NCBI GenBank assembly: GCA_002269645.1
Contig: NIVC01003733.1
Coordinates: 15,720-79,719, forward strand
Direction of reading: 5' to 3'
DNA: 64,000 nt
Source: Macrostomum lignano
Taxonomy: Eukaryota
Shown here in pieces: positions 5,217 through 58,755 of the stretch (within the stretch, counting starts at the first letter, position 1; every line of letters starts with the position of its first letter). The position numbers were made by a program, and so were the translations under genes. The notes under the pieces were generated by a model. It was not told where the DNA came from. It ran no database searches and worked only from the letters and a program-made list of their open reading frames with translations.

Positions 5217-6280
<1,064 letters not shown>

Positions 6281-10952: not shown

Positions 10953-11539
10953 GAAGGAGGAGAATTCTTTGCCTATTTGAGCTCATTTCGCTCTGCATGA
11001 ATCTGGATTTAAATTCTAGTCTCAAATTTCCGAGTTGGAACTGCTTGGGAATTTTATCCCACTCAGATAGCAGACAGTTCCCTGTTCTATCAAACAATTT
11101 TCTGCTCATTGGCACTATTCACAGCCCCTATTATGCGGTGACATGGGCAGGTTTTTCGGGGATTCAGGATCCCATTGGGGGAAGAGAATTTACATGAGTT
11201 GCCTCTTTTTTCTGGGCTCTGCTCAGTTGACTCCGGCTTTTTCTTGAAACGAGCTGAAAGCAGCTTCAGAACTGCCTTTGAAAGCAGCTGAAAGCTAACT
11301 TGTCTGCTCTCTTCTTCTTTGCCGAGGCAGTTCAATTTGTATGCAAATGTCAGCTTCTGCGGTCGGGTTTGCTGACTGAACTCGACTGAAAAAATACGTT
11401 AACTTTATTGAATTTAAAAAAAATTGTGGTAAAACTGAGCATCCAAAAAAATTGGATTCTGTGCACGCAGCAAACTACTGTATAGTAGGAATAGCGATTT
11501 ATGCAATAGGAAATGTTTTTGGTCTTCGGCGATGAGTAG

Positions 11540-17395: not shown

Positions 17396-18150
17396 CAGCC
17401 TGTCCGCCACATGACCCAGTGCAGCTGGGTGATCATCTCCCCAGCCGCAGATGAAGCTTCGGTGCCTGCTAAAAAATACATGCTCAGCTTGAATATTTAA
17501 AATTTTGTTCCTCAGCAGCAGCTGTCGGACTAAGTAAAGCAGCAAATGGCTCTTTTGCTTCCAGGAGAGAAGAAATGACACAAGGAGTCGGAGCCGACAG
17601 GGCTGCATCTTGAGGAGATTGGTTTGCTCAGAGAATTCCTCGCTCTAGTTGCCTCCGAAGCTGCCACTCAGCCGTCCCTCTTGGCCGCGCGGCTTTTCCA
17701 AGAAACCTCTCTTGTGTCCGGGCAAAGTTCAATAATTAACTTCCCCTTGGCAACTCCTCCTGCCGAGGACTAAGGTTCTAGAATAGATTTGCTTTCTACC
17801 ACTGCCGGCCCTCCCGCCTCCTTCATCCAACAGGCACCCATCTCCCATCTCAGCCACTCTGTCTCGCGTGGCCAATTTCCTTGCGGCTTCTAAAATGGCT
17901 GACTAGGGGGCAGTCGGGGAGTGAAAGACTGGGAAAGTAATTTGCCCGACTGACTTTGTTTCGACCGGATCTGTCGCTAGAGACTGTGGCTGCGTCTTTT
18001 GGGTTTTATTTTTCTAGAAGATTTCTGAATTTTATGGTTTCGATTAGACTTTTCCATTTGAAGAGTAGACATGCTCGTAGATGATGGGAGATGAGAGATG
18101 AGGATATCAATGAATGATAGCTAATGTTAGACGATTGGTGAATGATTATA

Positions 18151-21100
18151 GGTGATGGCAGATGATGGTAGATGATAGTAGATGATGGTAGATGATAGTA
18201 GATGATGGTAGATGATGGTAGATGATGGTAGAAGATGGTAGATGATGGTAGATGATAGTAGATGATAGTAGATGATGGTAGATGATGGTAGATGATAGTA
18301 GATGATAGTAGATGATGGTAGATGATGATAGATGATGGTAGATGATGGTAGATGATAGTAGATGATGGTAGATGATGGTAGATGATGGTAAATGATAGTA
18401 GATGATGGTAGATGATAGTAGATGATGGTAGATGATGGTAGATGATAGTAGATGATAGTAGATAATGGTAGATGATAGTAGATGATAGTAGATGATGGTA
18501 GATGATGGTAGATGATGGTAGATGATGGTAGATGATGGTAGATGATGGTAGATGATAGTAGATGATGGTAGATGATAGTAGATGATGGTAGATGATAGTA
18601 GATGATAGTAGATGATGGTAGATGATGGTAGATGATGGTAGATGATGGTAGATGATGGTAGATGATGGTAGATGATAGTAGATGATGGTAGATGATAGTA
18701 GATGATAGTAGATGATAGTAGATGATGGTAGATGATGGTAGATGATGGTAGATGATTGTAGATGATGGTAGATGATGGTAGATGATGGTACATGATAGTA
18801 GATGATGGTAGATGATAGTAGATGATAGTAGATGATAGTAGATGATGGTAGATGATGGTAGATGATGGTAGATGATGGTAGATGATGGTAGATGATGGTA
18901 GATGATGGAAGATGATGGTAGATGATAGTAGATGATGGTAGATGATGGTAGATGATGGTAGATGACGGTAGATGATGGTAGATGATGGTAGATGATGGTA
19001 GATGATGGTAGATGATAGTAGTTGATAGTAGATGATGGTAGATGATAGTAGATGATGGTAGATGATAGTAAATGATAGTAGATGATGGTAGATGATAGTA
19101 GATGATGGTAGATGATGGTAGATGATGGTAGATGATGGTAGATGATGGTAGATGATGGTAGATGATGGAAGATGATGGTAGAGGATAGTAGATGATGGTA
19201 GATGATGGTAGATGATGGTAGATGATGGTAGATGACGGTAGATGGTGGTAGATGATGGTAGATGATGGTAGATGATGGTAGATGATAGTAGATGATGGTA
19301 GATGATAGTAGATGATGGTAGATGATGGTAGATGATGCTAGATGATGCTAGATGATGCTAGATGATGGTAGATGATAGTAGATGATGGTAGATGATGGTA
19401 GATGATGATAGATGATGGTAGATGATGGTAGATGATAGTAGATGATGGTAGATGATGGTAGATGATAGTAGTTGATAGTAGATGATAGTAGATGATGGTA
19501 GATGATGGTAGATGATGGTAGATGATGGTAGATGATGATAGATGATAGTAGATGATGGTAGATGATGGTAGATGATGGTAGATGATGGTAGATGATGGTA
19601 GATGATAGTAGATGACGGTAGATGATGGTAGATGATGGTAGATGATAGTAGATGATGGTAGATGATGGTAGATGATGGTAGATGATGATAGATGATGATA
19701 GATGATGGTAGATGATGGTAGATGATGGTAGATGATAGTAGATGATGGTAGATGATGGTAGATGATGGTAGATGATGATAGATGATGATAGATGATGGTA
19801 GATGATGGTAGATGATGGTAGATGATGGAAGATGATGGTAGATGATAGTAGATGATGGTAGATGATGGTAGATGATGGTAGATGATGGTAGATGATGGTA
19901 GATGATGGTAGATGATGGTAGATGATGGTAGATGATGGTAGATGATGCTAGATGATGGTAGATGATAGTAGATGATGGTAGATGATGGTAGATGATGGCA
20001 GATGATGGTAGATGATGGTAGATGATAGTAGATGATGGTAGATGATGGTAGATGATGGCAGATGATGGTAGATGATGGTAGATGATAGTAGATGATGGTA
20101 GATGATAGTAGATGATAGTAGATGATGGTAGATGATGGTAGATGATGATAGATGATGATAGATGATGGTAGATGATGGTAGATGATGGTAGATGATAGTA
20201 GATGATGGTAGATGATGGTAGATGATGGTAGATGATGATAGATGATGATAGATGATGGTAGATGATGGTAGATGATGGTAGATGATGGAAGATGATGGTA
20301 GATGATAGTAGATGATGGTAGATGATGGTAGATGATGGTAGATGATGGTAGATGACGGTAGATGATGGTAGATGATGGTAGATGATGGTAGATGATGGTA
20401 GATGATGGTAGATGATGGTAGATGATGGTAGATGATGGTAGATGATGGTAGATGATAGTAGATGATGGTAGATGATGGTAGATGATGGTAGATGATGGTA
20501 GATGATAGTAGATGATGGTAGATGATGGTAGATGATGGTAGATGATAGTAGATGATGGTAGATGATAGTAGATGATAGTAGATAATGGTAGATGATAGTA
20601 GATTATAGTAGATGATGGTAGATGATGGTAGATGATGGTAGATGATAGTAGATGATGGTAGATGATAGTAGATGATGGTAGATGATAGTAGATGATGGTA
20701 GATGATGGTAGATGATGGTAGATGATGGTAGATGATGGTAGATGATGGTAGATGATAGTAGATGATGGTAGATGATAGTAGATGATAGTAGATAATGGTA
20801 GATGATAGTAGATGATAGTAGATGATGGTAGATGATGGTAGATGATGGTAGATGATGGTAGATGATGGTAGATGATAGTAGATGATGGTAGATGATAGTA
20901 GATGATAGTAGATGATGGTAGATGATGGTAGATGATGGTAGATGATAGTAGATGATGGTAGATGATAGTAGATGATGGTAGATGATGGTAGATGATGGTA
21001 GATGATGGTAGATGATGGTAGATGATGGTAGATGATGGTAGATGATGGTAGATGATGGTAGATGATGGTAGATGATGGTAGATGATGGTAGATGATGGTA

Positions 21101-24100
21101 GATGATAGTAGATGATGGTAGATGATAGTAGATGATGGTAGATGATAGTAGATGATGATAGATGATGGTAGATGATGGTAGATGATGATAGATGATGATA
21201 GATGATGGTAGATGATGGTAGATGATGGTGGATGATGGTAGATGATAGTAGATGATGGTAGATGATGGTAGATGATAGTAGATGATAGTAGATGATGGTA
21301 GATGATGGTAGATGATGCTAGATGATGGTAGATGATAGTAGATGATGGTAGATGATGGTAGATGATGGCAGATGATGGTAGATGATGGTAGATGATAGTA
21401 GATGATGGTAGATGATGGTAGATGATAGTAGTTGATAGTAGATGATAGTAGATGATGGTAGATGATGGTAGATGATGGTAGATGATGGTAGATGATGATA
21501 GATGATAGTAGATGATGGTAGATGATGGTAGATGATGGTAGATGATGGTAGATGATGGTAGATGATAGTAGATGACGGTAGATGATAGTAGATGATGGTA
21601 GATGATGGTAGATGATGGTAGATGATGGTAGATGATGGTAGATGATGGTAGATGATGGTAGATGATGATAGATGATGATAGATGATGGTAGATGATGGTA
21701 GATGATGGTAGATGATAGTAGATGATGGTAGATGATGGTAGATGATGGTAGATGATGATAGATGATGATAGATGATAGTAGATGATGGTAGATGATAGTA
21801 GATGATGGTAGATGATGGTAGATGATGGTAGATGATGGTAGATGACGGTAGATGATGGTAGATGATGGTAGATGATAGTAGATGACGGTAGATGATGGTA
21901 GATGATGGTAGATGATAGTAGATGATGGTAGATGATAGTAGATGATGGTAGATGATGGTAGATGATGGTAGATGATAGTAAATGATGGTAGATGATAGTA
22001 GATGATAGTAGATGATAGTAGATGATGGTAGATGATGGTAGATGATGGTAGATGATGGTAGATGATGATAGATGATAGTAGATGATGGTAGATGATGGTA
22101 GATGATGGTAGATGATGGTAGATGATGGTAGATGATAGTAGATGACGGTAGATGATGGTAGATGATGGTAGATGATAGTAGATGATGGTAGATGATAGTA
22201 GATGATGGTAGATGATGATAGATGATGATAGATGATGGTAGATGATGGTAGATGATGATAGATGATGATAGATGATGGTAGATGATGGTAGATGATGGTG
22301 GATGATGGTAGATGATGGTAGATGATGGTAGATGATGCTAGATGATGGTAGATGATAGTAGATGATGGTAGATGATGGTAGATGATGGCAGATGATGGTA
22401 GATGATGGTAGATGATAGTAGATGATGGTAGATGATGGTAGATGATAGTAGTTGATAGTAGATGATAGTAGATGATGGTAGATGATGGTAGATGATGGTA
22501 GATGATGGTAGATGATGGTAGATGATAGTAGATGATGGTAGATGATAGTAGATGATGGTAGATGATGGTAGATGATGGTAGATGATAGTAGATGACGGTA
22601 GATGATGGTAGATGATGGTAGATGATAGTAGATGATGGTAGATGATGGTAGATGATGATAGATGATGATAGATGATAGTAGATGATGGTAGATGATGGTA
22701 GATGATAGTAGATGATGGTAGATGATGGTAGATGATGGTAGATGATGATAGATGATGATAGATGATGGTAGATGATGGTAGATGATGGTAGATGATGGAA
22801 GATGATGGTAGATGATAGTAGATGATGGTAGATGATGGTAGATGATGGTAGATGATGGTAGATGACGGTAGATGATGGTAGATGATGGTAGATGATGGTA
22901 GATGATGGTAGATGATGGTAGATGATGGTAGATGATAGTAGATGATGGTAGATGATAGTAGATGATGGTAGATGATGGTAGATGATGCTAGATGATGGTA
23001 GATGATAGTAGATGATGGTAGATGATGGTAGATGATGGCAGATGATGGTAGATGATGGTAGATGATAGTAGATGATGGTAGATGATGGTAGATGATGGCA
23101 GATGATGGTAGATGATGGTAGATGATAGTAGATGATGGTAGATGATGGTAGATGATAGTAGATGATGGTAGATGATGGTAGATGATGATAGATGATGATA
23201 GATGATGGTAGATGATGGTAGATGATGGTAGATGATAGTAGATGATGGTAGATGATGGTAGATGATGATAGATGATGATAGATGATGATAGATGATGGTA
23301 GATGATGGTAGATGATGGTAGATGATGGTAGATGATGGTAGATGATGGTAGATGATGGTAGATGATGGTAGATGATGGTAGATGATGGTAGATGATGGTA
23401 GATGATGGTAGATGATGGTAGATGATGGTAGATGATGGTAGATGATGGTAGATGATGGTAGATGATAGTAGATGATGGTAGATGATAGTAGATGATGGTA
23501 GATGATGGTAGATGATAGTAGATGATGGTAGATGATGGTAGATGATGGCAGATGATGGTAGATGATGGTAGATGATAGTAGATGATGGTAGATGATGGTA
23601 GATGATAGTAGATGATGGTAGATGATGGTAGATGATAGTAGATGATGGTAGATGATGGTAGATGATAGTAGATGATGGTAGATGATGGTAGATGATAGTA
23701 GATGATGGTAGATGATAGTAGATGATAGTAGATGATGGTAGATGATAGTAGATGATAGTAGATGATGGTAGATGATAGTAGATGATAGTAGATGATGGTA
23801 GATGATAGTAGATGATAGTAGATGATGGTAGATGATAGTAGATGATAGTAGATGATGGTAGATGATGGTAGATGATGGTAGATGATGGTAGATGATGGTA
23901 GATGATGGTAGATGATGGTAGATGATGGTAGATGATGGTAGATGATGGTAGATGATGGTAGATGATGGTAGATGATGGTAGATGATGGTAGATGATGGTA
24001 GATGATGGTAGATGATGGTAGATGATGGTAGATGATGTAGATGATGGTAGATGATGTAGATGATAGTAGATGATGGTAGATGATAGTAGATGATAGTAGA

Positions 24101-24940
24101 TGATGGTAGATGATAGTAGATGATGGTAGATGATAGTAGATGATGGTAGATGATGGTAGATGATGGTAGATGATAGTAGATGATGGTAGATGATGGTAGA
24201 TGATGGTAGATGATGGTAGATGATAGTAGATGATGGTAGATGATAGTAGATGATGGTAGATGATAGTAGATGATAGTAGATGATGGTAGATGATGGTAGA
24301 TGATAGTAGTTGATAGTAGATGATAGTAGATGATGGTAGATGATGGTAGATGATGGTAGATGATAGTAGATGATGGTAGATGATGGTAGATGATAGTAGA
24401 TGATGGTAGATGATAGTAGATGATGGTAGATGATAGTAGATGATGTAGATGATGGTAGATGATAGTAGATGATGGTAGATGATGGTAGATGATGGTAGAT
24501 GATAGTAGATGATGGTAGATGATAGTAGATGATAGTAGATGATAGTAGATGATGGTAGATGATAGTAGATGGCGGTAGATGATGGTAGATGATGGTAGAT
24601 GATAGTAGATGATGGTAGATGATAGTAGATGATGGTAGATGATGATAGATGATGGTAGATGATAGTAGATGATGGTAGATGATGGTAGATGATGATAGAT
24701 GATGGTAGATGATGGTAGATGATGGTAGATGATGGTAGATGATGGTAGATGATGGTAGATGATGGTAGATGATGATAGATGATGATAGATGATGGTAGAT
24801 GATGGTAGATGATGGTGGATGATGGTAGATGATAGTAGATGATGGTAGATGATGGTAGATGATGGTAGATGATGATAGATGATGATAGATGATGATAGAT
24901 GATGGTAGATGATGGTGGATGATGGTAGATGATGGTAGAT
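18151..24940. repeat. 10-bp satellite (GATGATGGTA / GATGATAGTA), ~6.8 kb, ~680 copies
   Basis: Direct reading; explains the 1687-aa and 877-aa HHLPSSTIIY pseudo-ORFs. Confidence 0.97.
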
Positions 24941-44819: not shown

Positions 44820-47530
44820 AGGCGTCATGTAAAAAATCATAGAATAGTCATGCAAAAAATCATAGAAGCGTCATGTAAACAATCATAGAAGCGTCATGTA
44901 AAAAATCATAGAAGCGTCATGTAAACAATCATAGAAGCGTCATGTAAAAAATCATAGAAGCGTCATGTAAAAAATCATAGAAGCGTCATGTAAACAATCA
45001 TTGAAGCGTCATGTAAAAATCATTGAAGCGTCATGTAAAAATCATGGAAGCGTCATAAAAAATCATAGAAGCGTCAAGTAAAAAATCATAGAAGCGTCAT
45101 GTAAACAATCATAGAAGCGTCACGTAAAAAATCATAGAAGCGTGATGTAAAAAATCATAGAAGCGTCATGTAAACAATCATAGAAGTGTCATGTAAAATC
45201 ATAGATGCGTCATGTAAACAATCATAGAAGCGTCATGTAAAAAATCATAGAAGCGTCATGTAAAAAATCATAGAAGCGTCATGTAAACAATCATTGAAGC
45301 GTCATGTAAAAATCATTGAAGCGTCATAAAAAATCATAGAAGCGTCATGTAAAAAATCATAGAAGCGTCATGTAAACAATCATAGAAGTGTCATGTAAAA
45401 AATCGTAGAAGCGTCATGAAAAAATCATAGAAGCGTCATGTAAACAATCATAGAAGTGTCATGTAAAATCATAGATGCGTCATGTAAACAATCATAGAAG
45501 CGTCATGTAAAAATCATAGAAGCGTCATGTAAAAAATCATAGAAGCGTCATGTAAACAATCATTGAAGCGTCATGTAAACAATCATAGAAGCGTCATAAA
45601 AAATCATAGAAGCGTCATGTAAAAAATCATAGAAGCGTCATGTAAACAATCATAGAAGCGTCATGTAAAAAATCGTAGAAGCGTCATGAAAAAATCATAG
45701 AAGCGTCATGTAAACAATCATAGAAGCGTCATGTAAAAAATCATAGAAGCGTCATGTAAAAAATCATAGAAGCGTAATGTAAACAATCATAGACGTGTCA
45801 TGTAAAAATCATAGAAGCGTCATGTAAAAATCATAGAAGCGTCATGTAAACAATCATAGAAGCGTCATGTAAAAATCATAGAAGCGTCATGTAAACAATC
45901 ATTGAAGCGTCATGTAAAAATCATTTAAGCGTCATGTAAAAATCATAGAAGCGTCATGTAAACAATCATAGAAGCGTAATGTAAAAGCAAAGAAGCGTCA
46001 TGTAAAGATCATAGAAGCGTCATGTAAAAAAATCATAGAAGCGTCATGTAAAAAATCATAGAAGCGTCATTTAAAAAATCATAGAAGCGTCATGTAAAAA
46101 TCATGGAAGCGTCATGAAAAAATCATAGAAGCGTAATGTAAAAAATCATAGAAGCGTCATGTAAAAAATCATAGAAGCGTCATGTAAAAAATCATAGAAG
46201 CGTGATGTAAAAAATCATAGAAGCGTCATGTAAACAATCATAGAAGTGTCATGTAAAATCATAGATGCGTCATGTAAACAATCATAGAAGCGTCATGTAA
46301 AAAATCATAGAAGCGTCATGTAAAAAATCATAGAAGCGTCATGTAAACAATCATTGAAGCGTCATGTAAAAATCATTGAAGCGTCATAAAAAATCATAGA
46401 AGCGTCATGTAAAAAATCATAGAAGCGTGATGTAAAAAATCATAGAAGCGTCATGTAAACAATCATAGAAGTGTCATGTAAAATCATAGATGCGTCATGT
46501 AAACAATCATAGAAGCGTCATGTAAAAAATCATAGAAGCGTCATGTAAAAAATCATAGAAGCGTCATGTAAACAATCATTGAAGCGTCATGTAAAAATCA
46601 TTGAAGCGTCATAAAAAATCATAGAAGCGTCATGTAAAAAATCATAGAAGCGTCATGTAAACAATCATAGAAGTGTCATGTAAAAAATCGTAGAAGCGTC
46701 ATGAAAAAATCATAGAAGCGTCATGTAAACAATCATAGAAGCGTCATGTAAAAAATCATAGAAGCGTCATGTAAAAAATCATAGAAGCGTCATGTAAACA
46801 ATCATAGAAGTGTCATGTAAAAATCATAGAAGCGTCATGTAAAAATCATAGAAGCGTCATGTAAACAATCATTGAAGCGTCATGTAAAAATCATAGAAGC
46901 GTCATGTAAACAATCATTGAAGCGTCATGTAAAAATCATTTAAGCGTCATGTAAAAATCATAGAAGCGTCATGTAAACAATCATAGAAGCGTAATGTAAA
47001 AGCAAAGAAGCGTCATGTAAAGATCATAGAAGCGTCATGTAAAAAAATCATAGAAGCGTCATGTAAAAAATCATAGAAGCGTCATGTAAAAAATCATAGA
47101 AGCGTCATGTAAAAATCATGGAAGCGTCATGAAAAAATCATAGAAGCGTAATGTAAAAAATCATAGAAGCGTCAAGTAAAAATCATAGAAGCGTCAAGTA
47201 AAAAATCATAGAAGCGTCATGTAAAAAATCATAGAAGCGTCATGAAAAAATCATTAAAGCGTCATGTAAAAATCATGAAAGCGTCATGTAAAAGGCATAG
47301 AAGCGTCATGAAAAAATCATAGAAGCGTCAAGTAAAAAATCATAGAAGCGTCAAGTAAAAATCATTAAAGCGTCATGTAAAAATCATAGAAGCGTCATGT
47401 AAAAATCATAGAAGCGTCATGTAAAAAATCATAGAAGCGTCATGTAAAAATCATGGAAGCGTCATGAAAAAATCATAGAAGCGTCATTTAAAAAATAAGG
47501 AAGCATCATGGTAGAATAAAAGAAGCGTCA
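44820..47530. repeat. 22-23-bp satellite (AAAAAATCATAGAAGCGTCATGT), ~120 copies, inside the Helitron
   Basis: Direct reading. Confidence 0.95.
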
Positions 47531-48348
47531 TGTCAGACATGAAGGGTTCATGTAAAAATTAAATGCAGCTATAATGCTGTGCTGGGGAGAAAAACAGACG
47601 TAAAGGCTCTCAGAGAATAACTGAGATTACAGGGGGGGGGTTTCTGAGATGTCAAAGCAAAAGCCGGAAGCTACTTCAAAGTTCATGTACTTTACTCAAT
47701 TTTTTTATTGCATTCTTTGTTGGCTCGCCACGGGGTGAGGCGCTGATAGAAGAAGAGTCATGTAAAAAATAAAAGTGGCACTATGTATACATAAAAGAAA
47801 AGTCATGTCGAAGTTAAAAGATTCATTTGGGAATTGCTACGATGTCAAAGCTTGGTGGAAATCGTTATAGTGCTTGATTCTTAAAGAAGGAATCACTAAA
47901 ATGTCAAGGCTTAGGGGAGAAGAATTGCTGAGATTTCAAGACTTTAGGTTGGGTTAAAGTTAGGTTTAGGTCAGGTGTGGGTTGAGGGTTATATTTTATC
48001 GGGTTTCAAGTTTAACAGGGGGTTTTTTAGATGTCAAGGTTTTTTGGGGGCCATCGCTGACATGTCAAGGCTTACGGGGGGAATAGCTGAGATGTCAAGG
48101 CTCACGGGGGTATAAATGAGATTTCAAGGCTAAAGTCAGAAGCTACATGTAGTTTATTGAAAACTTTTTATTACATTATTTGATGCCTCGTCAGGGGAGG
48201 GATCGCTGATAAAAATAAAAAAAGCTTCATGTCGAAGTTAAGAGATTCATTTGGGAATCCCTACGATGTCGAGGCTTGCAGGGAATCGCTATAATGCTGT
48301 AGTAGTGCTATAATGACTCTTAGAGAGAATTACTGAAATTTCAATGCT

Positions 48349-50519: not shown

Positions 50520-50528
50520 AAAATATAT

Positions 50529-51398
50529 TGTAGTGCATGCGCCCTTGTCAGTTGGCAGGGCGCGTTGCACTTTGGGGCTGGTTGGGGGGGGTTGGCGGGC
50601 GTGGCAGGGTCTGGCCCCGGCCGGGCTTTGCGCGTGCCCCTCCCTAGCCGTGCCCCTGCCCCGTGCTCAGGGCTGGTTGGCTGCGGCCGGGCCAGCTTTG
50701 GCGCGGGTGCAGCCCCTCCCCCCTTAGGCGGGGTTTTGATTGGCTGGGCCGGCGTGGTTTGTTTTGGTGAGCTTAGCCGGTGGGGCCGTCTGCCCCAGGG
50801 TTTGGGTGCTATTTATGGTGCGACTCTGGCTCTTGCCCACCACCTGCGTGCTTTTTGTGTTTTGGTGTGCTCCGAGAGTGCAAGCGCTAGACCTGATAAA
50901 AGAAACAGCAACATTAGCTACTTGGATAAAAGAAACACAATAGCCTAATTGAGAAGAGTCTTGGAGAATTAAGAAGAAGTCGGAAACTGCGCTTGAGACC
51001 TGCGAATAATAAACGGTGAACAGTCATCTGGCCACTGGTAAGCCGCCTGCTGTTTGAGTCCTTTCTTTCCGGGAAGCTTGCTAGGCCGAATTCTTGCCAG
51101 AGCGTCATAACGCCGGAAGACCATATAGCTTCTGTAGTACGGTACCGTTTACCATATATATTGCGTACGCCCTACGGTATAGAGAATAGAAGCACTCGAG
51201 AGTGTCACCACACCTCGAGCCGCAGCGTGAACTCTGAGTGTCACAACACCAGAGGGATCGAATTATTATCGCAGAGCGTCGCCACGCCTGCTCGTCGTAT
51301 TCATAAAAGTACAGACAGAGCGTCACAACGCCTGTTATATCACATATAATATATATTGTACTCGGGACTGGGCACCCAAGCCGACCCGGGTTACAACA
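50529..51398 (+). repeat. 5' LTR (~870 bp)
   Basis: TGTAGT...TTACAACA; direct repeat of 59469-60338. GATAAAAG TATA-like motifs at ~50.9 kb, AATAAA at 51008-51013, CTG|GTAAGC donor at 51038. Confidence 0.95.
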
Positions 51399-51401
51399 AA
51401 T

Positions 51402-51419
51402 TGGCGCCCGAACAGGGAC
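51402..51419 (+). promoter_or_regulatory. Primer-binding site complementary to tRNA-Lys(UUU)
   Basis: TGGCGCCCGAACAGGGAC, the 18-nt Lys3-type PBS, 3 nt after the LTR. Confidence 0.95.
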
Positions 51420-51643
51420 CCTGTCCCCAAAGATTGAAAGTCGGCTCAGTTGCTTTCTATGAAAATTGCTGTCATATTGTGAGCGTTTTTTCTTATTAAA
51501 ACGACTGTTGCTTATCGCTTGCGGCTATTGCCCTACCGCAAAAGACATTGATCACGGTGACAGACAACTGATTGGTTATCAGAGATCGATAGCTATCACC
51601 ACCTCAGAGTAAAGAGTAGCAACGGTATTCAGTGACTTCGGCC

Positions 51644-52564
51644 ATGGGTGATCAAGCTATGGACCAACTGATCGATGCGCTGGCTGCGCGCCTCAGAGCC
51701 AACGCCGACCGAGCAGCGCCACGACTCTCGAAGCCGCCCAAGTACATACCAACGATGAATTTCAGCCTATGGCTGCAGAGTTTCAACGAGTACTGCGAGG
51801 CTGTCGGTATAGAAGAAGAAGCCAGGCGGCCGCACCTGATCGGCCTACTCGACCTCACAACAGCCTACGCTGCCGTTGATAAGCTGGACTTGGCAGACGA
51901 CATCGAGTACGGGGAATTCACGGATGCACTACTGGCGCGGTTCACCATGAACAGAACAGCCCAGGACTACCGTTTTGAATTATCGAATCGAGATCAGCTA
52001 GACAAGGAGTCTGTGGAGACCTACGGGGACGAGCTGCTGGAGTTGGTGCGCAATGCCTTCCCCACCGCGGATGCCGACACCAGGACAGAGCTGGCGAAAG
52101 ACAGATTTCTAAAAGGCGTTCGAGTAACCGACACTGTCCGAGAAAGACTGTACCTGCAGCAGCCGGCCAACCTCACCGATGCCATTCGAACAGTAAGACA
52201 ACTTGAAGCAGCCCAGAAGGCGTCTTCGACCCAGTCCAAAGCCAGACCCAGGGCTGGGCTGAATGCCTTTGCCACCGAAACGTCGACAGGTGACACCGGC
52301 AAAGACGAGGAGCTACGCCAACTGCGTCAAAAAGTAAAGGAAATGGAAGAAAAGATCCGACGGATGGAGCAGATGCAGCAGGGCCAGCAGGAGCCGCCCG
52401 AACCCGGCCTTCAAGACAAGCAACAATCCAAGCAGGCGGCTCCGTCCAGCTCGAAGCAGCGTAGCGGTGTCAAGTGCTACAACTGCGGGGAGATAGGCCA
52501 TCTCTCATTCCAGTGCCCAAAGCCGGGAAAAGGCAAGAGGGGCCCACCAGCTGGAGGCAAGTGA
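51644..52564 (+). CDS. gag: Gag with CCHC zinc knuckle
   Basis: ATG in GCCATGG context; capsid-like helical region; CYNCGEIGHLSFQC. Confidence 0.92.
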   Translation: MGDQAMDQLIDALAARLRANADRAAPRLSKPPKYIPTMNFSLWLQSFNEYCEAVGIEEEARRPHLIGLLDLTTAYAAVDKLDLADDIEYGEFTDALLARFTMNRTAQDYRFELSNRDQLDKESVETYGDELLELVRNAFPTADADTRTELAKDRFLKGVRVTDTVRERLYLQQPANLTDAIRTVRQLEAAQKASSTQSKARPRAGLNAFATETSTGDTGKDEELRQLRQKVKEMEEKIRRMEQMQQGQQEPPEPGLQDKQQSKQAAPSSSKQRSGVKCYNCGEIGHLSFQCPKPGKGKRGPPAGGK

Positions 52565-52572
52565 GCCCCTGC
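52525..52572 (+). promoter_or_regulatory. -1 programmed ribosomal frameshift signal (gag-pol)
   Basis: Slippery heptamer G GGA AAA (52525-52531) in the gag frame, 6-nt spacer, then hairpin AGGGG(G)C-C-CAC / GTG-A-GCCCCT; the -1 frame is the open pol frame. Confidence 0.75.
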
Positions 52573-55500
52573 AATTCGTCAGCCTCCGAACAAGCCGTCA
52601 TCTCATCTCATCATCATCAAACGCCCGGTACCGCATCTCATCAGCCTCCAGTGTCCGGTACTGCGCCTCATCAGAATCCAGTGTCCGGTACTGCGCCTCA
52701 TCAGCATCCAGTGTCCGGTACCGCGCTTCATCAGCCTCCAGTGTCCGGTACTGCGTCTCGTCAGCCTCCAGTGTCCGGTACAGTACCTCATCAGCATCCA
52801 GTGTCCGGTACTGCGGCTCATCAGCATCCAGTGTCCGATACTGCGCCTCATCAGCATCCAGTGTCCGGTACAGCGTCTCATCAGCCTCCAGTGTCCGGTA
52901 CTGCGTCTCATCAGCATCCAGTGTCCGGTACTGCGCCTCATCAGCATCCAGTGTCCGGTACAGCGTCTCATCAGCCTCCAGTGTCCGGTACTGCGTCTCA
53001 TCAGCATCCAGTGTTCGGTACAGTACCTCATCAGCATCCAGTGTCCGGTACTGCGCCTCATCAGCATCCAGTGTCCGGTACTGCGCCTCATCAGCATCCA
53101 GTGTCCGGTACAGCGTCTCATCAGCCTCCAGTGTCCGGTACTGCGTCTCATCAGCCTCCAGTGTCCGGTACAGTATCTCATCAGCATCCAGTGTCCGGTA
53201 CTGCGTCTCATCAGCCTCCAGTGTCCGGTACAGTATCTCATCAGCATCCAGTGTCCGGTACTGCGTCTCATCAGCCTCCAGTGTCCGGTACTGCGTCTCA
53301 TCAGCATCTAGTGTCCGGTACAGTGCCTCATCAGCCCCAGCGTCCGGTACTGCACCTCACCATCAACTAGCCGGTTTTGCACAGTCGCAGCGCCCAATCA
53401 CCGTCAACGCACCTCAGTCAATTCAAATCAATCCTGCGTCGATATATGTTACGGCCTCAATCGCAGGGCGGAGGGTGAACGCGCTAGTGGACTCGGGAGC
53501 TTCCTGCACCATTATCTCACGGGAAGCTTACCAAAGTATGCCGAAACAGAGCGTCAGAGATTTGGCCGGTGCTGAAGGCTACGTTAGCTTAGCAAACGGC
53601 AGCCCGATCGAAATCGAGAGGACAGTCCTGTTGCGACTGTCAATCGCTGATAAAGTAATAGATACTCCAGCCTTGGTAGTCAGCGGAGTGAAGTACCAAC
53701 TGGTATTGGGATCCGACTTCTGCAGGGACAACAGTTGCGTCATCGACTACAAGAGAGCTGTCTTTTCAGTGCAGGACTCTGCAATCCCGTTCCGATGGCA
53801 AGCTGAGCGCCCGATCGTTTGCAGAATTTTGGCGACAAGGTCCAGCACAATACCGCCAGGTCATCAAGCAGTGCTGTCAGCAAGGCTGGAGAGCAAAGGA
53901 CGACGGAACAGAGGGTGTGTCGGTCTAACTGAGAATCTCGGGGCGAACGATTTGGCAGCTGGCCGCTGGCTTGCTAAGGCCTTAGTGATCCCAAATAGCG
54001 GCAGCCGTCTGCCGACTCGACTCATCAATATCACGGAGGAGCCAGTCAGAATTCGCCAAGGTTGTACGCTCGGGTGGTTCTGCCCCCTAGAATCCACCGA
54101 ACCGTTGAACACCATCAAGCTCTTAGCCGTAGAGTCAGGAGACGATCCACAGGAAGAGCCGAAGTTCCAAGGCAGCGACAGCCCTTCGGAAGCAGACTTG
54201 CTACCAAACTCGTACGGCGACTGTGGACTGTCGACGAAAGAAGACGAAGAATTTAGAATCCTTGTCCGGAGTTACGGCGATGTGTTCACGACCAAGCAGA
54301 CTTCAAGCAAGTTAACTACCGTGGTGGAGCATGAAATTAACACCGAGAATGCGCGCCCAATCAAGATCCCACCGCGTCGTCTGCCTCCCCACTTACAGCC
54401 AGAAGTAGATCGTCAAGTCAACGAGTTGCTGGAAAAGGGGCAGATCGAAGAAGCACAGTCACCATGGTGCTTTCCTTTGGTGTGCGTAAAGAAGAAATCA
54501 GGGGAAATGAGGATGTGCGTCGATTATCGGAAGTTGAATGAGGTCACCGTCAAGGATGCAGTGCCGATGCCGAGGGTCGATGATGCGCTGGAGGCAGTAC
54601 ACGGCGCCAAGATCTTCTCGACAATGGACCTTCACAGCGGGTTTTGGCAAGTAGGGGTGAGACCTCAGGATCAGGACAAGACGGCGTTTGCAGTGCCGCA
54701 TCGCGGACAATTTCGATGGAAGGTTATGCCGTTCGGCTTAGTGAACAGCCCAGCAACATTCACCAGGTTGATGGCAGCCGTTTTGGACAAGCAGATGTGG
54801 AAAACCTGTCTCGTCTACATCGACGATCTACTGGTTTGGTCAACCGACGTGGATGAACACCTGAGAAGACTGGAGGAAATATTCAGCAAGTTGCGGCAAG
54901 CAAATTTGTGCCTGAAGCCCCAGAAGTGTCACTTTTTGCAAAAGCAAGTGAAATTTCTCGGTCACACGCTGTCGGCTGCTGGCATCAGTACCGATGAGGA
55001 GAAAGTTCAAGAAGTGAAGAACTGGCCAACACCGCGATCCTCGACGGAGCTGCATTCATTCTTGGGCCTGTGTGGCTATTACAGAAAGTTTATTAAAGAT
55101 TTCGCCGCAATAGCAGCGCCTCTAACTCGGTTGACAACAAAAGACGCAAAGTTTGAATGGAAAACGGAACAGCAGCTGGCGTTCGAAACATTGAAGGAAC
55201 GAATGACAAGTTCAGAGGTTATGGCTCATCCGGATTTCTCCCCGGATGCCGGAGAGTTTATCCTCGATACTGATGGCAGTTCGAAGATGGGCATAGGAGC
55301 GGTACTTTCTCAAGTCCAGCCAGATGGAGCAGAACGAGTGATCGCCTATGGGTCCAAGACACTAAATCAAGCCGAACGCAACTATTGTACGACTCGTTTA
55401 GAACTACTAGCGGTTGTGACTTTCATCATGAAGTTCAGATACTATCTGCTGGAAAAGCGTTCTGTCTGCGAACGGACCACAGCAGCCTGCAATGGTTAAA

Positions 55501-57259
55501 AAACTTCAGTGACGCCGAGGGACAGGTTGCTCGCTGGTTGGAGAAGTTGGCTCCATTTCAGTACCGCATCGTTCACAGACCAGGTCGATCGCATGGCAAC
55601 GCGGACGCAATGTCGAGGAAGCCAGTACGGAGACATTTCGGAGCGGAGACATGCCCGGCATGTGCGCAGCATCCAGAAGGACTAAATGCAGTCGAATTTG
55701 AACGATTCTCAGCCGGCAATCTGGCAAGCGAGCAGGATCAAGACGACGATTTGAGAACAGTAAAGGAAGCGCTTGGCTCAAACCCAGTTCCAGATAAAAG
55801 CGAGACAGCTTGGAGTCCACTGGCTAGAGCCGTCTGGACTCGAAAAGACGACCTGGTGCTGCAAGAGAACGTGCTCCTTGTGAGAAACAAAGACAGGCGC
55901 GATGAGTATCAAATGGTGCTGCCACGAAAGGCATTGGATCGTATCTTGAAAACCCTACACGAGGGAGTGGGAGGTGGCCACATGGGCTTTGCGAAGACAA
56001 AATTTAAAGTGCTTCAGCGCTACTGGCGTCCAGGATTGTCTCGTGCCATTGAAGAATATATTCGCGGTTGTGCCACCTGCTGCAAGTCAAAGCCGGGCAA
56101 GCGAAACCGAGCACCCCTGCAACCGTTGACATTCGCAGCACCATTCGATTGCGTCATGATGGACATTGTCGGGCCGCTACCGCGGAGTAAGGCTGGAAAC
56201 ATTTATCTCCTGACAGTCCAAGATTCGTTTACGAAGTGGCCTGACGCGTACCCGCTTCGCAACCAGAAGGCAAGGACGGTGGCAAGGGCGCTTTTCAATC
56301 GATGGATTAGCCAGCATGGATGTCCGAGTACTTTGCACAGTGACCAAGGAAGGAACTTCGAATCGCAAGTGATGCGCGAAATGTGCAGGATACTCGAGAT
56401 CCGCAAGTCCAGAACCACAGCTTATCATCCGAGCGGAAATGGACAAGTAGAAAACTTCAATAAAAGTTTAAAATCCATCCTCAAGTGCTGCCTAGAGGAC
56501 TCAGGACGAAACGACTGGGAAGAATTCGTCAGCTCTGCGTTAATGGCGTACCGATCAAGCGTGCATCGAGCAACGGGTTATACTCCCCACTACATGGTCT
56601 ATGGCACGGAGATGCGCCTACCGATAGACTTGACTGACCAGCCGCCACAGCCTGTCGATTCGCATGTAAATTTCGTCAAGGAGCTAGAAGACAAATTGCA
56701 GACAGCTCATCGCGCTGCTCGACAGCAGTTGAATACTTATCAGCGGCGACAGAAGGACCAGTACGATAAAAGAACCCGAGGATCCGATATTCAGGAGGGT
56801 GACCATGTCTTCGTCTACAGCCCCGCCCTGAAACCAGACGAAGCCGCAAAGTTTCACGTAAGCTGGCTCGGCCCAGTGAAGGTGCTCGAAAGAAGATCCG
56901 AGGTGCTCTTCAAAGTGGAAAACCCGTCAAATCGTAAAAAGTCGAAGTTCGTCCACTTCAACAACCTCCGGAAGTTCGCTCGACCGGCCGCCCTGGAAAC
57001 ACCAGTTAGGACCGCGGCACCGCCGGAGGTGGTCGACGAGACGGACTCGGAGACAGAGGCGGAATGCGAGACTTGGACTCGGCCTCAACTGATGCCGCCA
57101 CAGGACGCCGAGGAAGTCGCCGAGGTGCTGGAAGAGCAGATGGAGTTGGTTGACGACCCGCAGCCTACTCATAACCCGGTGGAAGCTGCACCTGAGCCTC
57201 GAAGGTCCGGAAGGTTGCGACGGCCGCCGGATCGCTACGGCCAGCCAGTGACATTCTAA
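52525..57259 (+). CDS. pol: Pol polyprotein (repeat linker, protease, RT, RNase H, integrase), broken by two single-base deletions (~53337 and ~55451)
   Basis: LVDSGAS (53484-53504), CVDYRKLN, YIDD (54816-54827), DTDGS RNase H, RTDHSSL, integrase H-H-C-C and DIVGP/DQG/ENFN triad. Confidence 0.93.
52615..53365 (+). repeat. 30-bp in-frame coding tandem repeat, ~24 units, encoding HQ(H/P)PVSGT(A/V)(P/S)
   Basis: CATCAG unit starts every 30 nt from 52639 to 53329. Confidence 0.95.
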
Positions 57260-57682
57260 TGGGTTACTCGTCATCGTGAAGTCTCATCAGTTTCATATGC
57301 GATTATCGTTAAAAGCCAGAAAAATATTTCGCGAATGCGTCATTCATCATAAATACGAGTACTTCATCAATGCATCATTCATCATGAGTACGAGCAGTTC
57401 GCCAATGCGTCATTCAAGAAATTCGTTAATGCGTCATTAAGTCATTTTAATCGCATCTTCATCGAAGTTTTGACGAGAATCAAATTTTGCCTACAAAATC
57501 TATGCATCGGTGGAGGGTATTCGGACTGGCATCCGGTGACAACTCGAATTTGCGCTGGGACTTTACGATGCAGGGTACCGCGGGCCACGGTCCGAGGAGA
57601 TGACGCTCTGGCAAGAGGGGAGCAGGAGTAGAATCTGGAGTCAGGGACAGTGTGTCGCAGGTTTGAGTACGTTGCTTTGCAG

Positions 57683-58630
57683 ATGGATTTGTACGCTGTC
57701 CTCCAAGTCGGACACACAGCCGAACGTGCCGAGATCAGGCGAGTCTATCGACAGCTAGCGCTCTTCTGGCACCCGGACAAGCACCCGGACAAGGAACTCG
57801 CAGGACGCCGTTTCCAAGAAATTGAGACTGCTGGTAGAATTCTATCGTGTCCATATCGCCGAGCGATGTACGACCAGTTGGGCGATAAATCAATCCCGTA
57901 TGACGAGGCTGTAACCTTCGCAATGACGTTCATACCTCCTACTGGTGTAAGAATGCCGGCGGACATCGAAGAGGGAGTACAGCAAAGGCGAGAAGTTGAA
58001 GAAGCTCAGCGCAAGGAAGCTGGTCTCAGGCAGGGGAGACAGGGACAGAGGAACGATTACGAAGCGGATGGCTACATTCTAATCTCGGACGACGATGAGA
58101 GCGAGGAGTCGGATGAGTGTAGCATCGACACAGAAGAAGAAGACGAGTTGCTGGCATCGGATGGCTCCTCCGGAAGTAGTGAGTCAGAAGCTATGGAGAT
58201 CGATGTACCGGAAAGCAAGGAGGTTGTCTCACATCGCGCGTCGGGAGCAATATGGGATGATGAAAAGCTGTCGTTATCGGCAGCTGCGCGTCAGCTCCGC
58301 CATCGTTTGATGAAGCATATTTTGGCTGGACAGTCGGACGGAATCGTGTCAGTGCTCACGGCTATGAGACGGCTGTTTCGAGACTCGCAGCGAGAACCGA
58401 GGAGCGCACTGTCAATGGTCCTGCTGCAGGCGTTGTTCTTCATCCGCAGAGATATCGCTCCGGTAAAGCGTCAGAGAGCAGGCCGCCGTTACTGGTCTAG
58501 GCAGAGTTTTGATTGTTTCGTCCGACAGCTCTGTCACGAGCTCATCCCGCTGTTCGGTTTGCGCCGGCCCGGCAGGCTGCTCGAGGTCCTGAAAAGCTGC
58601 GTCGGTCTCCCTGGACTTCGGGTTCGCTAG
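57683..58630 (+). CDS. ORF3: DnaJ/Hsp40 J-domain protein (315 aa) with acidic/SIM-like tract and unknown helical C-terminal domain
   Basis: MDLYAVLQV...EIRRVYRQLALFWHPDKHP...RRFQEI..A.RILS....RAMYDQLG matches the four-helix J-domain with HPD at 57770-57778; uninterrupted, intronless, inside the LTRs. Confidence 0.9.
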   Translation: MDLYAVLQVGHTAERAEIRRVYRQLALFWHPDKHPDKELAGRRFQEIETAGRILSCPYRRAMYDQLGDKSIPYDEAVTFAMTFIPPTGVRMPADIEEGVQQRREVEEAQRKEAGLRQGRQGQRNDYEADGYILISDDDESEESDECSIDTEEEDELLASDGSSGSSESEAMEIDVPESKEVVSHRASGAIWDDEKLSLSAAARQLRHRLMKHILAGQSDGIVSVLTAMRRLFRDSQREPRSALSMVLLQALFFIRRDIAPVKRQRAGRRYWSRQSFDCFVRQLCHELIPLFGLRRPGRLLEVLKSCVGLPGLRVR

Positions 58631-58755
58631 GGTGCCCAGTTCCGATTCATACTGTATTTTCTGCTTACTTGTATGTATGTTGTTACGCTCGTACTGTATG
58701 GGTTTATTTGCATGCTAGTGGGGTCAAGCTTCCTGGGGGAATGGCTCAGCAGCTG

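What the first reader, a model, noticed from the sequence alone, without database searches (positions are those of the whole stretch)
57683..58630. Gypsy LTR retrotransposon carrying an intact Hsp40 J-domain accessory gene in the env position
Seen: between the integrase stop (57259) and the PPT/3' LTR lies a 315-aa uninterrupted ORF beginning with a complete J-domain (HPD intact, closest in pattern to DNAJB6-type J-domains). A charged linker, an acidic tract and a ~120-aa helical domain I cannot assign follow. It has no signal peptide, TM segment or furin site, so it is not env. Known: J-domains recruit and activate Hsp70; polyomavirus T antigens use a viral J-domain to remodel host complexes; Hsp70/Hsp90 chaperones load Argonaute/PIWI proteins. 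Inference: the element encodes its own Hsp70 co-chaperone for particle assembly/disassembly or to counter host silencing. I know of no described Metaviridae lineage with this cargo.
Basis: partly seen in the sequence, partly recalled or inferred. Interest (0 to 1): 0.92.

Follow-up and report, generated by a model that had tools for sequence, protein, structure and literature searches.

The report
Retrotransposon-encoded Hsp70 co-chaperone gene
A jumping gene of the retrovirus-like Gypsy type in the flatworm Macrostomum lignano carries, where an envelope gene would sit, a conserved gene for a J-domain protein (the kind that switches on the cell's Hsp70 chaperone), and I found no published description of such a passenger in this class of elements.

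Summary
Window 57683-58630 is an intact 315-codon ORF between the integrase stop (57259) and the PPT and 3' LTR (59457, 59469) of a 9.8-kb Ty3/Gypsy element (50529-60336). The host is Macrostomum lignano.

ORF3 has three parts:
- A complete J-domain (Pfam DnaJ, E 5.8e-18, HPD intact).
- A disordered acidic linker of about 75-120 residues.
- An arginine-rich five-helix C-terminal domain with no Pfam, PDB or viral structural match.

It is not a one-off capture. Homologous ORF3s lie directly after integrase in two other M. lignano families and in Logan assemblies of four sequencing runs, and one more is on a short metagenome contig without context. These elements share only 46-69% integrase identity with the window.

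HPD is invariant. Synonymous sites are saturated (pS 0.68-0.84) while pN is 0.30-0.51, and the frames stay open. ORF3 divergence tracks integrase divergence. No near-identical host DNAJ exists. A YAG abuts the ATG in 5 of 7 families, which suggests a splice or trans-splice acceptor. One relative has a chromodomain inside ORF3.

More distant relatives (42-43% integrase identity) lack the gene. This copy's pol has one frameshift.

Hsp70 recruitment and the client are inferred, not shown. I found no prior description, so I class it as a new variant of a known kind (accessory-gene-bearing LTR retrotransposons).

The parts
50529..51395 (+). 5' LTR (TGTA...TACA termini)
   Evidence: blastn of the two ends gives 99.2% identity over 871 columns. 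Sequence read. No canonical heat-shock element lies inside it.
51402..51419 (+). Primer-binding-site-like 18-mer starting TGG, 6 nt after the 5' LTR
   Evidence: Read directly. The tRNA partner was not tested, because no tRNA gene is present in the window or in the loci scanned.
51632..52564 (+). gag (310 codons as listed) with a CCHC zinc knuckle
   Evidence: Pfam zf-CCHC E 7.7e-8, with sub-threshold Retrotrans_gag and PNMA matches. It is 42% identical to gag of the M. lignano relative L001.
52606..53353 (+). 30-nt minisatellite (25 copies) filling the gag-pol junction
   Evidence: TRF: period 30, 25.0 copies, 88% matches. It is open in one frame as a decapeptide repeat. The relative L001 has only about 200 nt between gag and PR.
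53475..57259 (+). pol (PR-RT-RNase H-integrase), broken in this copy by one frameshift and no in-frame stops
   Evidence: Pfam finds Asp_protease_2, RVT_1, RT_RNaseH_2, Integrase_H2C2, rve and Integrase_p58_C. tblastn of five intact relatives onto the element shows one frame switch; four of the five show no stop inside the aligned parts and one (P0033) shows a single stop. A single-base assembly error cannot be excluded.
57334..57438 (+). Four copies of AATGCRTCATT in the integrase-ORF3 spacer
   Evidence: 4 matches in the whole window, all here, against 0.05 expected. The motif is not conserved in relatives' spacers. Role unknown.
57671..57682 (+). Candidate 3' splice or trans-splice acceptor (pyrimidine-rich run ending CAG) abutting the ORF3 ATG
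   Evidence: YAG lies immediately before the ATG in 5 of 7 diverged families and is shifted by one base in the other two. Binomial P is 9e-7 to 4e-5. No RNA evidence is available.
57683..58630 (+). ORF3: 315-aa J-domain protein (whole gene, including the stop)
57686..57874 (+). J-domain (residues 2-64), with HPD at 57770-57778
   Evidence: Pfam DnaJ E 5.8e-18. PDB sequence hits run to 4.5e-12. Foldseek superposes it at about 1 A rmsd on solved J-domains. HPDK is invariant in 8 homologues.
58034..58261 (+). Disordered acidic linker (residues 118-193)
   Evidence: pLDDT is below 50. Residues 73-193 carry net charge -25, and the linker is acidic in the homologues too (-16 to -48 in five, -5 in L005).
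58271..58612 (+). Arginine-rich five-helix C-terminal domain (residues 197-310), found only in this family
   Evidence: AF2 pLDDT 83, pTM 0.79. pI 11.8, net +17. No Pfam hit and no PDB sequence hit. Foldseek best E is 0.49 against PDB and 0.82 against BFVD. Only 5 relatives appear among 1.84 billion representatives.
58756..59217 (+). GC-rich minisatellites (32-nt and 20/41-nt units) in the 3' untranslated part
   Evidence: TRF.
59457..59468 (+). Polypurine tract AGGAGGGGAGGG directly before the 3' LTR
   Evidence: Read.
59469..60336 (+). 3' LTR
   Evidence: No matching target-site duplication is visible next to the two LTRs.

Best explanation
ORF3 is a conserved accessory gene of a flatworm sub-lineage of Ty3/Gypsy LTR retrotransposons. 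It encodes a class-C (type III) J-domain protein.

Proposed working:
1. ORF3 is expressed from a processed RNA. That RNA is either cis-spliced subgenomic, as for env genes in the same position, or spliced-leader trans-spliced, which is common in M. lignano. The acceptor would be the YAG that abuts the ATG.
2. The basic five-helix C-terminal domain binds a specific target. The most likely target is a nucleoprotein of the element itself (Gag/RNA particle or integrase-cDNA complex) or chromatin.
3. The N-terminal J-domain, through its HPD loop, docks host Hsp70 and triggers its ATPase, so the chaperone clamps onto that target.
4. Hsp70 then drives an assembly, disassembly or remodelling step that helps the element. 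The logic is that of auxilin (J-domain plus lattice-binding module) and of polyomavirus T antigens (viral J-domain plus target-binding modules).

Shown:
- the gene, its domains and its position;
- its presence across diverged families;
- purifying selection and co-divergence with integrase.

Inferred:
- Hsp70 recruitment (from established J-domain biochemistry);
- the splicing route;
- the identity of the client.

My estimates are about 0.85 that this is a selected, functional element gene, about 0.7 that it acts through Hsp70, and about 0.35-0.4 that the client is the element's own particle or integration complex rather than a host complex.
For: Position:
- ORF3 lies between the integrase stop and the PPT and 3' LTR.
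- Homologues occupy the same slot in M. lignano L001, which is a complete element with about 100% identical LTRs (ORF3 at 10953-11933), and in L005.
- They also follow integrase in Logan contigs L002, L006 and L007.

Domains:
- Pfam DnaJ matches every homologue at E 1e-12 to 1e-18.
- HPDK is invariant, and helix II basic residues align with DNAJB2.
- The J-domain model fits solved J-domains at about 1 A.
- The C-terminal domain has 14-21 invariant columns and models confidently.

Selection:
- pS is 0.68-0.84 (saturated) against pN of 0.30-0.51.
- dN/dS is 0.24-0.30 in the two pairs where dS could be estimated.
- All compared frames are open over 283-351 codons.

Vertical inheritance:
- Integrase identity ranks L006 69% > L007 56% > L001/L005 51-54% > L002 48%.
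- This parallels ORF3 J-domain identity of 61 > 53 > 45 > 38 > 27%.

Not a recent capture:
- No close host DNAJ exists among 5.8 billion proteins, a set that includes the M. lignano proteome.
- A second copy of the same family keeps ORF3 residues 1-313 identical while its PR and IN pieces differ.

Expression route:
- The YAG|ATG junction is conserved.
- M. lignano trans-splices about 39% of its transcripts, including polycistronic precursors (PMC5730564).

Target hint:
- The C-terminal domain has pI 9.7-12 in six of the seven homologues measured (8.1 in L005), behind an acidic linker.
- L001's ORF3 carries a Pfam chromodomain (E 9e-9) between the J-domain and the C-terminal domain.
Against: - No RNA, protein or biochemical evidence was available, so Hsp70 stimulation and the client are untested.
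- The window copy is itself probably not autonomous, because pol has one frameshift. gag and PR are in different frames, separated by a minisatellite.
- One homologue (L006) is broken in its J-domain part, and L010 has no start codon in the J-domain frame.
- The L005/L002 branch aligns poorly in the C-terminal domain, so the 'specific target' module may not be the same throughout.
- The structure models rest on a shallow alignment of 6 sequences.
- The number of copies per genome could not be counted with these tools.
- The species behind the Logan runs are unknown.
Confidence: 0.75

Rival explanations
1. Counter-silencing or chromatin reading. The J-protein is aimed at host chromatin or silencing machinery rather than at the element's own particle. 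Possible targets are HP1/H3K9me-type heterochromatin or Hsp70/Hsp90-dependent Argonaute/PIWI loading. It would bring Hsp70 there to loosen repression, or would steer integration.
For: - A true chromodomain (Pfam E 9e-9, above cut-off) sits inside ORF3 of the M. lignano relative L001.
- The C-terminal domain is very basic (pI up to 12), which is compatible with binding to nucleic acid or nucleosomes.
- Integrase in these elements has no chromodomain of its own.
Against: - The chromodomain is found in only one of seven families, and the window ORF3 lacks it.
- Nothing links the C-terminal domain to any known chromatin or small-RNA factor.
Confidence: 0.2
2. Heat-shock circuit tuning. The element's J-protein perturbs the Hsp70-HSF1 feedback loop, by titrating or redirecting Hsp70, and so raises stress-type transcription of the element. 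This would fit the reported heat activation of M. lignano LTR retrotransposons.
For: Several M. lignano Ty3 families have acquired heat-shock elements and are induced more than 250-fold by heat (PMC12801592). A J-domain is by nature part of that circuit.
Against: - No canonical HSE, even allowing one mismatch, lies in either LTR of this element.
- The paper reports HSEs in only 6 of 137 families and does not mention a J-domain gene.
- A conserved, specific C-terminal domain argues for a defined client rather than bulk titration.
Confidence: 0.08
3. Passive passenger. ORF3 is a recently transduced fragment of a host DNAJ mRNA, or a host gene or gene-model artefact that merely lies next to the element, and it has no function for the element.
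For: - Automatic annotation has merged it into chimeric 'J domain-containing protein' gene models (A0A1I8G8I7 of 3375 aa, and A0A1I8G7E4).
- This copy's pol is frameshifted.
Against: - It lies inside the LTR pair in three M. lignano families.
- It is conserved in position and architecture across elements with saturated synonymous divergence.
- There is no close host donor.
- The C-terminal domain occurs nowhere else among 1.84 billion representatives.
Confidence: 0.03

Closest known systems
Env-type third ORFs of Ty3/Gypsy elements (errantiviruses such as Drosophila gypsy) and other extra ORFs of LTR retrotransposons
   Same: It is a separate third reading frame between integrase and the PPT and 3' LTR. 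A likely splice acceptor lies just upstream of its start, as expected for a subgenomic mRNA.
   Different: - It has no signal peptide, transmembrane segment or glycoprotein features.
- The product is a soluble J-domain protein.
- A more distant relative (L011) has yet another, unrelated ORF in this slot.
Polyomavirus large and small T antigens (viral N-terminal J-domain)
   Same: It is a J-domain encoded by a mobile genetic parasite, has HPD, sits at the N-terminus and is followed by target-binding modules. The presumed logic is to recruit host Hsc70 to remodel a chosen complex (established knowledge, not tested here).
   Different: - T antigens belong to a DNA virus, not a retroelement.
- There is no homology outside the J-domain.
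- The closest solved J-domains to ORF3 are cellular DNAJB2/B6/B8 and DnaJ, not T antigens.
Cellular class-C J-domain proteins with a dedicated client module (for example auxilin/DNAJC6), and the small class-B proteins DNAJB2/B6/B8
   Same: It has the J-domain fold and HPD. The J-domain is closest in sequence to DNAJB2/B6/B8 (E about 5e-12 to 6e-11). The architecture of a J-domain plus one private targeting domain matches class C.
   Different: - It has no G/F region, zinc finger or class A/B C-terminal domains (DnaJ is the only Pfam hit).
- The C-terminal domain has no cellular relative.
LTR retrotransposon lineages that fixed an extra host-derived domain (chromoviruses with an integrase chromodomain; orchid Ty3/Gypsy with an ALKB m6A-demethylase domain, PMC9289625)
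   Same: A rare capture of a host domain that then became a conserved, lineage-defining feature. One relative (L001) even has a chromodomain.
   Different: - The captured domain is a J-domain.
- It sits in a separate ORF rather than fused to pol.
- The chromodomain of L001 is in ORF3, not at the integrase C-terminus.

Membership tests
J-domain protein (Hsp40/DNAJ) family | J-domain sequence signature (about 65-70 residues) above the curated threshold | tested here: met
   Pfam PF00226 at 65.2 bits against a cut-off of 27.8, full model 1-63. All homologues also pass.
J-domain protein (Hsp40/DNAJ) family | His-Pro-Asp loop between helices II and III | tested here: met
   H30-P31-D32 are present and invariant in 8 aligned homologues.
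J-domain protein (Hsp40/DNAJ) family | Helical J-domain fold | tested here: met
   The AF2 model has pLDDT 82-89 over the domain. Foldseek gives rmsd 0.9-1.3 A to 2ej7, 2dmx and 6rzy.
J-domain protein (Hsp40/DNAJ) family | Stimulates Hsp70 ATPase in an HPD-dependent way | not testable with these tools
   Biochemical property, inferred only from the intact signature.
Class A or class B DNAJ proteins | G/F-rich region, with or without a zinc-finger domain, and DnaJ C-terminal substrate-binding domains | tested here: not met
   DnaJ is the only Pfam hit for ORF3, and the PDB sequence matches stop at residue 75 or before. It is therefore class C by exclusion.
Ty3/Gypsy (Metaviridae) LTR retrotransposon | Two long terminal repeats with TG...CA ends flanking the coding region | tested here: met
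   867/868-nt LTRs, 99.2% identical, with TGTA...TACA termini.
Ty3/Gypsy (Metaviridae) LTR retrotransposon | gag with a zinc knuckle, and pol in the order PR-RT-RNase H-IN | tested here: met
   Pfam domains appear in that order. The best relatives are Ty3-type Pol proteins.
Ty3/Gypsy (Metaviridae) LTR retrotransposon | PBS next to the 5' LTR and PPT next to the 3' LTR | tested here: inconclusive
   A TGG-initiated 18-mer (51402-51419) and a 12-nt purine run (59457-59468) are in the right places. Complementarity to a host tRNA could not be tested.
Ty3/Gypsy (Metaviridae) LTR retrotransposon | Target-site duplication flanking the insertion | tested here: not met
   The 4-6 bases outside the two LTRs do not match. 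This speaks to the history of this copy, not to the family assignment.
Retroviral or errantiviral env | Signal peptide, transmembrane anchor and surface/TM glycoprotein organisation | tested here: not met
   Maximum 19-residue hydropathy is 1.33, the N-terminus is J-domain helix I, and there is no env-type Pfam hit.
Chromoviruses | Chromodomain at the C-terminus of integrase | tested here: not met
   No Chromo hit in the integrase ORF. A chromodomain occurs instead inside ORF3 of relative L001.

The most novel reading that the evidence does not exclude
A whole sub-lineage of flatworm Ty3/Gypsy elements has evolved its own chaperone-targeting factor. This is a J-protein whose private basic domain (plus a chromodomain in one family) takes host Hsp70 to chromatin or to silencing complexes. 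The effect would be to undo repression or to choose and clear integration sites. That would be a retroelement counter-defence or integration mechanism based on hijacking the Hsp70 cycle, with no described parallel in Metaviridae or Retroviridae.
Probability: 0.18. Interest if true: 0.9.

Novelty: new variant of a known kind. Interest (0 to 1): 0.72.

Why it matters
LTR retrotransposons and retroviruses depend on host chaperones, but they are not known to encode their own Hsp70 co-chaperone. Fixation of extra protein domains in these elements is regarded as rare (PMC9289625).

A J-domain gene that has travelled with a Gypsy lineage long enough to saturate synonymous sites implies a chaperone-dependent step worth encoding. 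It also gives a handle on which step of the retroelement cycle needs Hsp70.

The host adds to the interest:
- LTR retrotransposons make up about 21% of the M. lignano genome (PMC5730564).
- Some M. lignano families have already been shown to plug into the heat-shock response (PMC12801592).
- M. lignano is a stem-cell and regeneration model with existing expression atlases, so expression questions can be answered from existing data.

There is a practical point too. Current annotation hides the gene inside chimeric 'J domain-containing protein' models.

Tried and rejected
- A word-indexed search of 5.8 billion proteins with ORF3 alone found only weak J-domain hits. The family surfaced only through integrase relatives and their contigs and through an exhaustive HMMER search with the C-terminal part.
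- The profile search with alignment A1 added only one chimeric M. lignano model.
- The search for related loci failed on the C-terminal alignment because it is too divergent. With the L010 protein it found nothing in metagenome contigs.
- The exact ORF3 product is not on record as a called gene, so copies in the genome could not be counted.
- Pfam, PDB sequence search and Foldseek against PDB and BFVD gave nothing for the C-terminal domain.
The models therefore use only 6 sequences.
- dN/dS ratios could mostly not be computed because dS is saturated. The one near-identical pair (L006 and L009) has no differences at all over 260 codons.
- HSE scan of the LTRs was negative.
- The tRNA scan to identify the PBS partner found no tRNA genes.
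- The AATGCRTCATT repeat in the spacer is not shared by relatives.
- No other copy or solo LTR of this family lies in the window.
- Readthrough from integrase into ORF3 is rejected, because three in-frame stops lie between them.
- Clade assignment within Ty3/Gypsy (Mag, Mdg3 and so on) was not attempted, because no reference set was obtainable from the tools.
Full report
**1. What is at the coordinates**

The mechanical ORF list shows an open frame at 57650-58630 on the + strand.

- Pfam places a complete DnaJ domain at the N-terminus: model positions 1-63 of 63, E 5.8e-18, 65 bits against a cut-off of 27.8.
- His-Pro-Asp is at residues 30-32.
- Against solved structures, only the first 75 residues or fewer match. 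The best matches are DNAJB2, HCG3, E. coli DnaJ, DNAJB6 and DNAJB8, at E 5e-12 to 6e-11. The basic helix II residues align.
- AlphaFold2 on a six-sequence family alignment gives three regions:
  - a confident J-domain (pLDDT 82-89);
  - a disordered stretch at residues 118-193;
  - a five-helix C-terminal domain at residues 197-310.
- Modelled alone, the C-terminal domain reaches pLDDT 83 and pTM 0.79.
- The J-domain model superposes on solved J-domains at about 1 A.
- There is no transmembrane-grade hydrophobic segment and no signal peptide.

**2. The setting**

Two 867/868-nt LTRs (50529-51395 and 59469-60336) are 99.2% identical. Between them, in order, lie:

- a TGG-initiated PBS-like 18-mer, 6 nt after the 5' LTR;
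- gag with a CCHC knuckle;
- a 30-nt minisatellite of 25 copies;
- PR-RT-RNase H-integrase;
- a 423-nt spacer;
- ORF3;
- GC-rich minisatellites;
- a 12-nt polypurine tract that abuts the 3' LTR.

Compared with five intact relatives, pol of this copy shows one frame switch (four of the five alignments contain no stop, one contains a single stop). gag and PR are in different frames on either side of the minisatellite. I saw no target-site duplication. This copy is therefore probably not autonomous, although a single-base assembly error cannot be excluded.

Three in-frame stops separate integrase from ORF3, so ORF3 is not a readthrough extension.

**3. Host**

An exhaustive HMMER search with the C-terminal 161 residues found a 3375-aa UniProt model from Macrostomum lignano (A0A1I8G8I7, 'J domain-containing protein') that is 100% identical over the matched stretch (residues 1-159 of the query).

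- The model is a chimera of PR pieces, IN pieces, ORF3 and translated satellite.
- It contains ORF3 residues 1-313 unchanged, while its PR and IN pieces differ from the window.
- It therefore comes from another copy or allele of the same family.

**4. Is the gene a one-off?**

No. The integrase search found the closest relatives at only 46-50% identity. I read the contigs behind them.

- M. lignano L001:
  - It is a complete element with about 100% identical LTRs.
  - It has a 326-codon ORF directly after integrase.
  - That ORF aligns with window ORF3 over residues 2-304 (28% identity, E about 1e-17).
- M. lignano L005 has a 283-codon J-domain ORF in the same slot.
- Logan contigs L002, L006 and L007 show integrase followed by the J-domain ORF.
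- L008, L009 and the metagenome contig L010 carry further homologues with the same three-part architecture.

In the eight-sequence alignment HPDK is invariant. The C-terminal domain has 14-21 invariant columns, depending on the set aligned.

More distant relatives lack the gene. A sea-anemone element (L004, pol 43%) has no J-domain ORF. A metagenome element (L011, integrase 42%) has a different, unassignable 251-codon ORF with a hydrophobic stretch in that slot.

**5. Selection and inheritance**

- In every between-family pair, the proportion of synonymous differences is at or near saturation (pS 0.68-0.84), while pN is 0.30-0.51.
- Where dS could still be estimated, dN/dS is 0.24-0.30.
- Frames of 283-351 codons that stay open at this divergence cannot be neutral sequence.
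- Among the homologues read end to end, one (L006) is clearly broken in its J-domain part. L010 has no start codon in the J-domain frame on its contig.
- Identity in integrase and identity in ORF3 fall in the same rank order across the loci. This fits vertical descent with the element rather than repeated captures.
- The best non-element matches are generic J-domains at 33-50% identity over about 20% of the protein, even though the database holds M. lignano proteins. There is therefore no recent host donor.

**6. How it may be expressed**

- In five of seven independent families a YAG lies immediately before the ATG that opens the J-domain. In the other two it is displaced by one base.
- Given the AG and YAG frequencies in these spacers, the binomial probability is 4e-5 and 9e-7 respectively.
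- The -3 base is a pyrimidine, so this is not a Kozak-type preference.
- I read it as a 3' splice acceptor.
- M. lignano trans-splices about 39% of its transcripts and processes polycistronic precursors this way (PMC5730564). Either a cis-spliced subgenomic RNA or spliced-leader trans-splicing would do.
- This is inference. No RNA data were available to me.

**7. What the protein probably does**

- The intact J-domain signature implies docking to Hsp70 and stimulation of its ATPase. This is established for the family but was not tested here.
- The absence of G/F, zinc-finger and class A/B C-terminal domains makes it a class-C protein, in which a private module chooses the client.
- That module here is a very basic helical bundle (pI 9.7-12 in six of seven homologues) behind a strongly acidic linker (net -16 to -48 in the same six).
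- It has no Pfam family, no PDB sequence relative and no structural neighbour in PDB or BFVD (best E 0.49 and 0.82).
- Only five relatives, all of this family, appear among 1.84 billion representative proteins.
- In L001 a genuine chromodomain (E 9e-9) is inserted between the J-domain and the C-terminal domain. This points to chromatin or nucleoprotein as the field of action in at least one family.

My best account is an element-encoded adaptor that brings Hsp70 to an element nucleoprotein (particle or integration complex) or to chromatin, in order to drive an assembly or disassembly step. The chromatin or counter-silencing version is the more novel rival. A heat-shock-circuit role is less likely, because neither LTR has a heat-shock element.

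**8. Comparison with what is known**

- The slot is that of env in errantiviruses, but the product is not env.
- The logic resembles polyomavirus T-antigen J-domains and auxilin-type class-C proteins.
- The evolutionary pattern resembles chromoviruses and the orchid ALKB-bearing Gypsy elements (PMC9289625).
- The 2025 catalogue of M. lignano LTR retrotransposons (PMC12801592) does not mention a DnaJ or J-domain gene in its main text, and its supplements were not available.
- Five further full-text searches for J-domain or DnaJ genes in LTR retrotransposons or transposable elements found nothing relevant.
- The library is open-access only, so absence is not proof.

**9. Verdict**

This is a real, conserved, selected accessory gene. 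It is a new variant of a known kind (LTR retrotransposons with an extra gene) with an undescribed cargo. Interest is high for mobile-element and chaperone biologists. The biochemical role and the client remain to be shown.

Noticed in passing
L001:10953-11933 (M. lignano NIVC01000975): The ORF3 homologue of this related element has a bona fide chromodomain (Pfam Chromo, E 9.2e-9) inserted between the J-domain and the C-terminal domain. The integrase itself has none. This is an unusual place for a retrotransposon chromodomain.
   Followed up: partly
window 52606-53353: A 30-nt minisatellite (25 copies, 88% matches) fills the gag-pol junction. It is open in one frame as a (HQHPVSGTAS)-like decapeptide repeat. 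The relative L001 has only about 200 nt there.
   Followed up: partly
window 57334-57438: There are four exact copies of AATGCRTCATT, spaced 35, 35 and 24 nt apart, and they occur only in the integrase-ORF3 spacer (0.05 expected by chance). The motif is not shared by relatives. It could be a family-specific regulatory or RNA-processing element.
   Followed up: partly
window 58756-59217: GC-rich minisatellites (32-nt unit x5.8; 20/41-nt units) lie between the ORF3 stop and the polypurine tract. The UniProt gene model translates them as protein.
   Followed up: no
window 50524-50528 and 60337-60341: No target-site duplication flanks the element although the LTRs are 99.2% identical. The copy may result from recombination between copies or from rearrangement in this satellite-rich region.
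   Followed up: no
window 18149-24940 (also 1327-2432, 5218-6280, 6811-8660, 11538-13871, 44822-47533): The window is dominated by tandem repeats, including a 6.8-kb (TAGATGATGG)n array with extreme GC skew and a 2.7-kb 23-nt satellite just upstream of the element. The long ORFs listed there are repeat artefacts.
   Followed up: no
L005:7970-14914 (M. lignano NIVC01000020): This related element has an internal duplication of about 3.3 kb that repeats RT-IN and places a truncated J-domain copy upstream of the second RT. UniProt model A0A1I8G7E4 (P0131) fuses these pieces.
   Followed up: partly
L011:3549-4304 (JGI metagenome 3300040954): A more distant relative (integrase 42% identical) carries a different 251-codon ORF after integrase. 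It has no Pfam match and one hydrophobic stretch, so the third-ORF slot of this lineage holds different cargo in different branches.
   Followed up: partly
P0125 = UniProt A0A1I8G8I7; P0131 = A0A1I8G7E4: Public gene models named 'J domain-containing protein' in M. lignano are chimeras of retrotransposon PR and IN pieces, ORF3 and translated satellites. They could mislead counts of host DNAJ genes.
   Followed up: partly
window 51035-51044 (and the same site in the 3' LTR): A GGTAAG-type sequence lies about 20-30 nt downstream of an AATAAA in the LTR. It is a possible 5' splice donor for a subgenomic RNA joining to the acceptor at 57682. No evidence beyond the motif.
   Followed up: no
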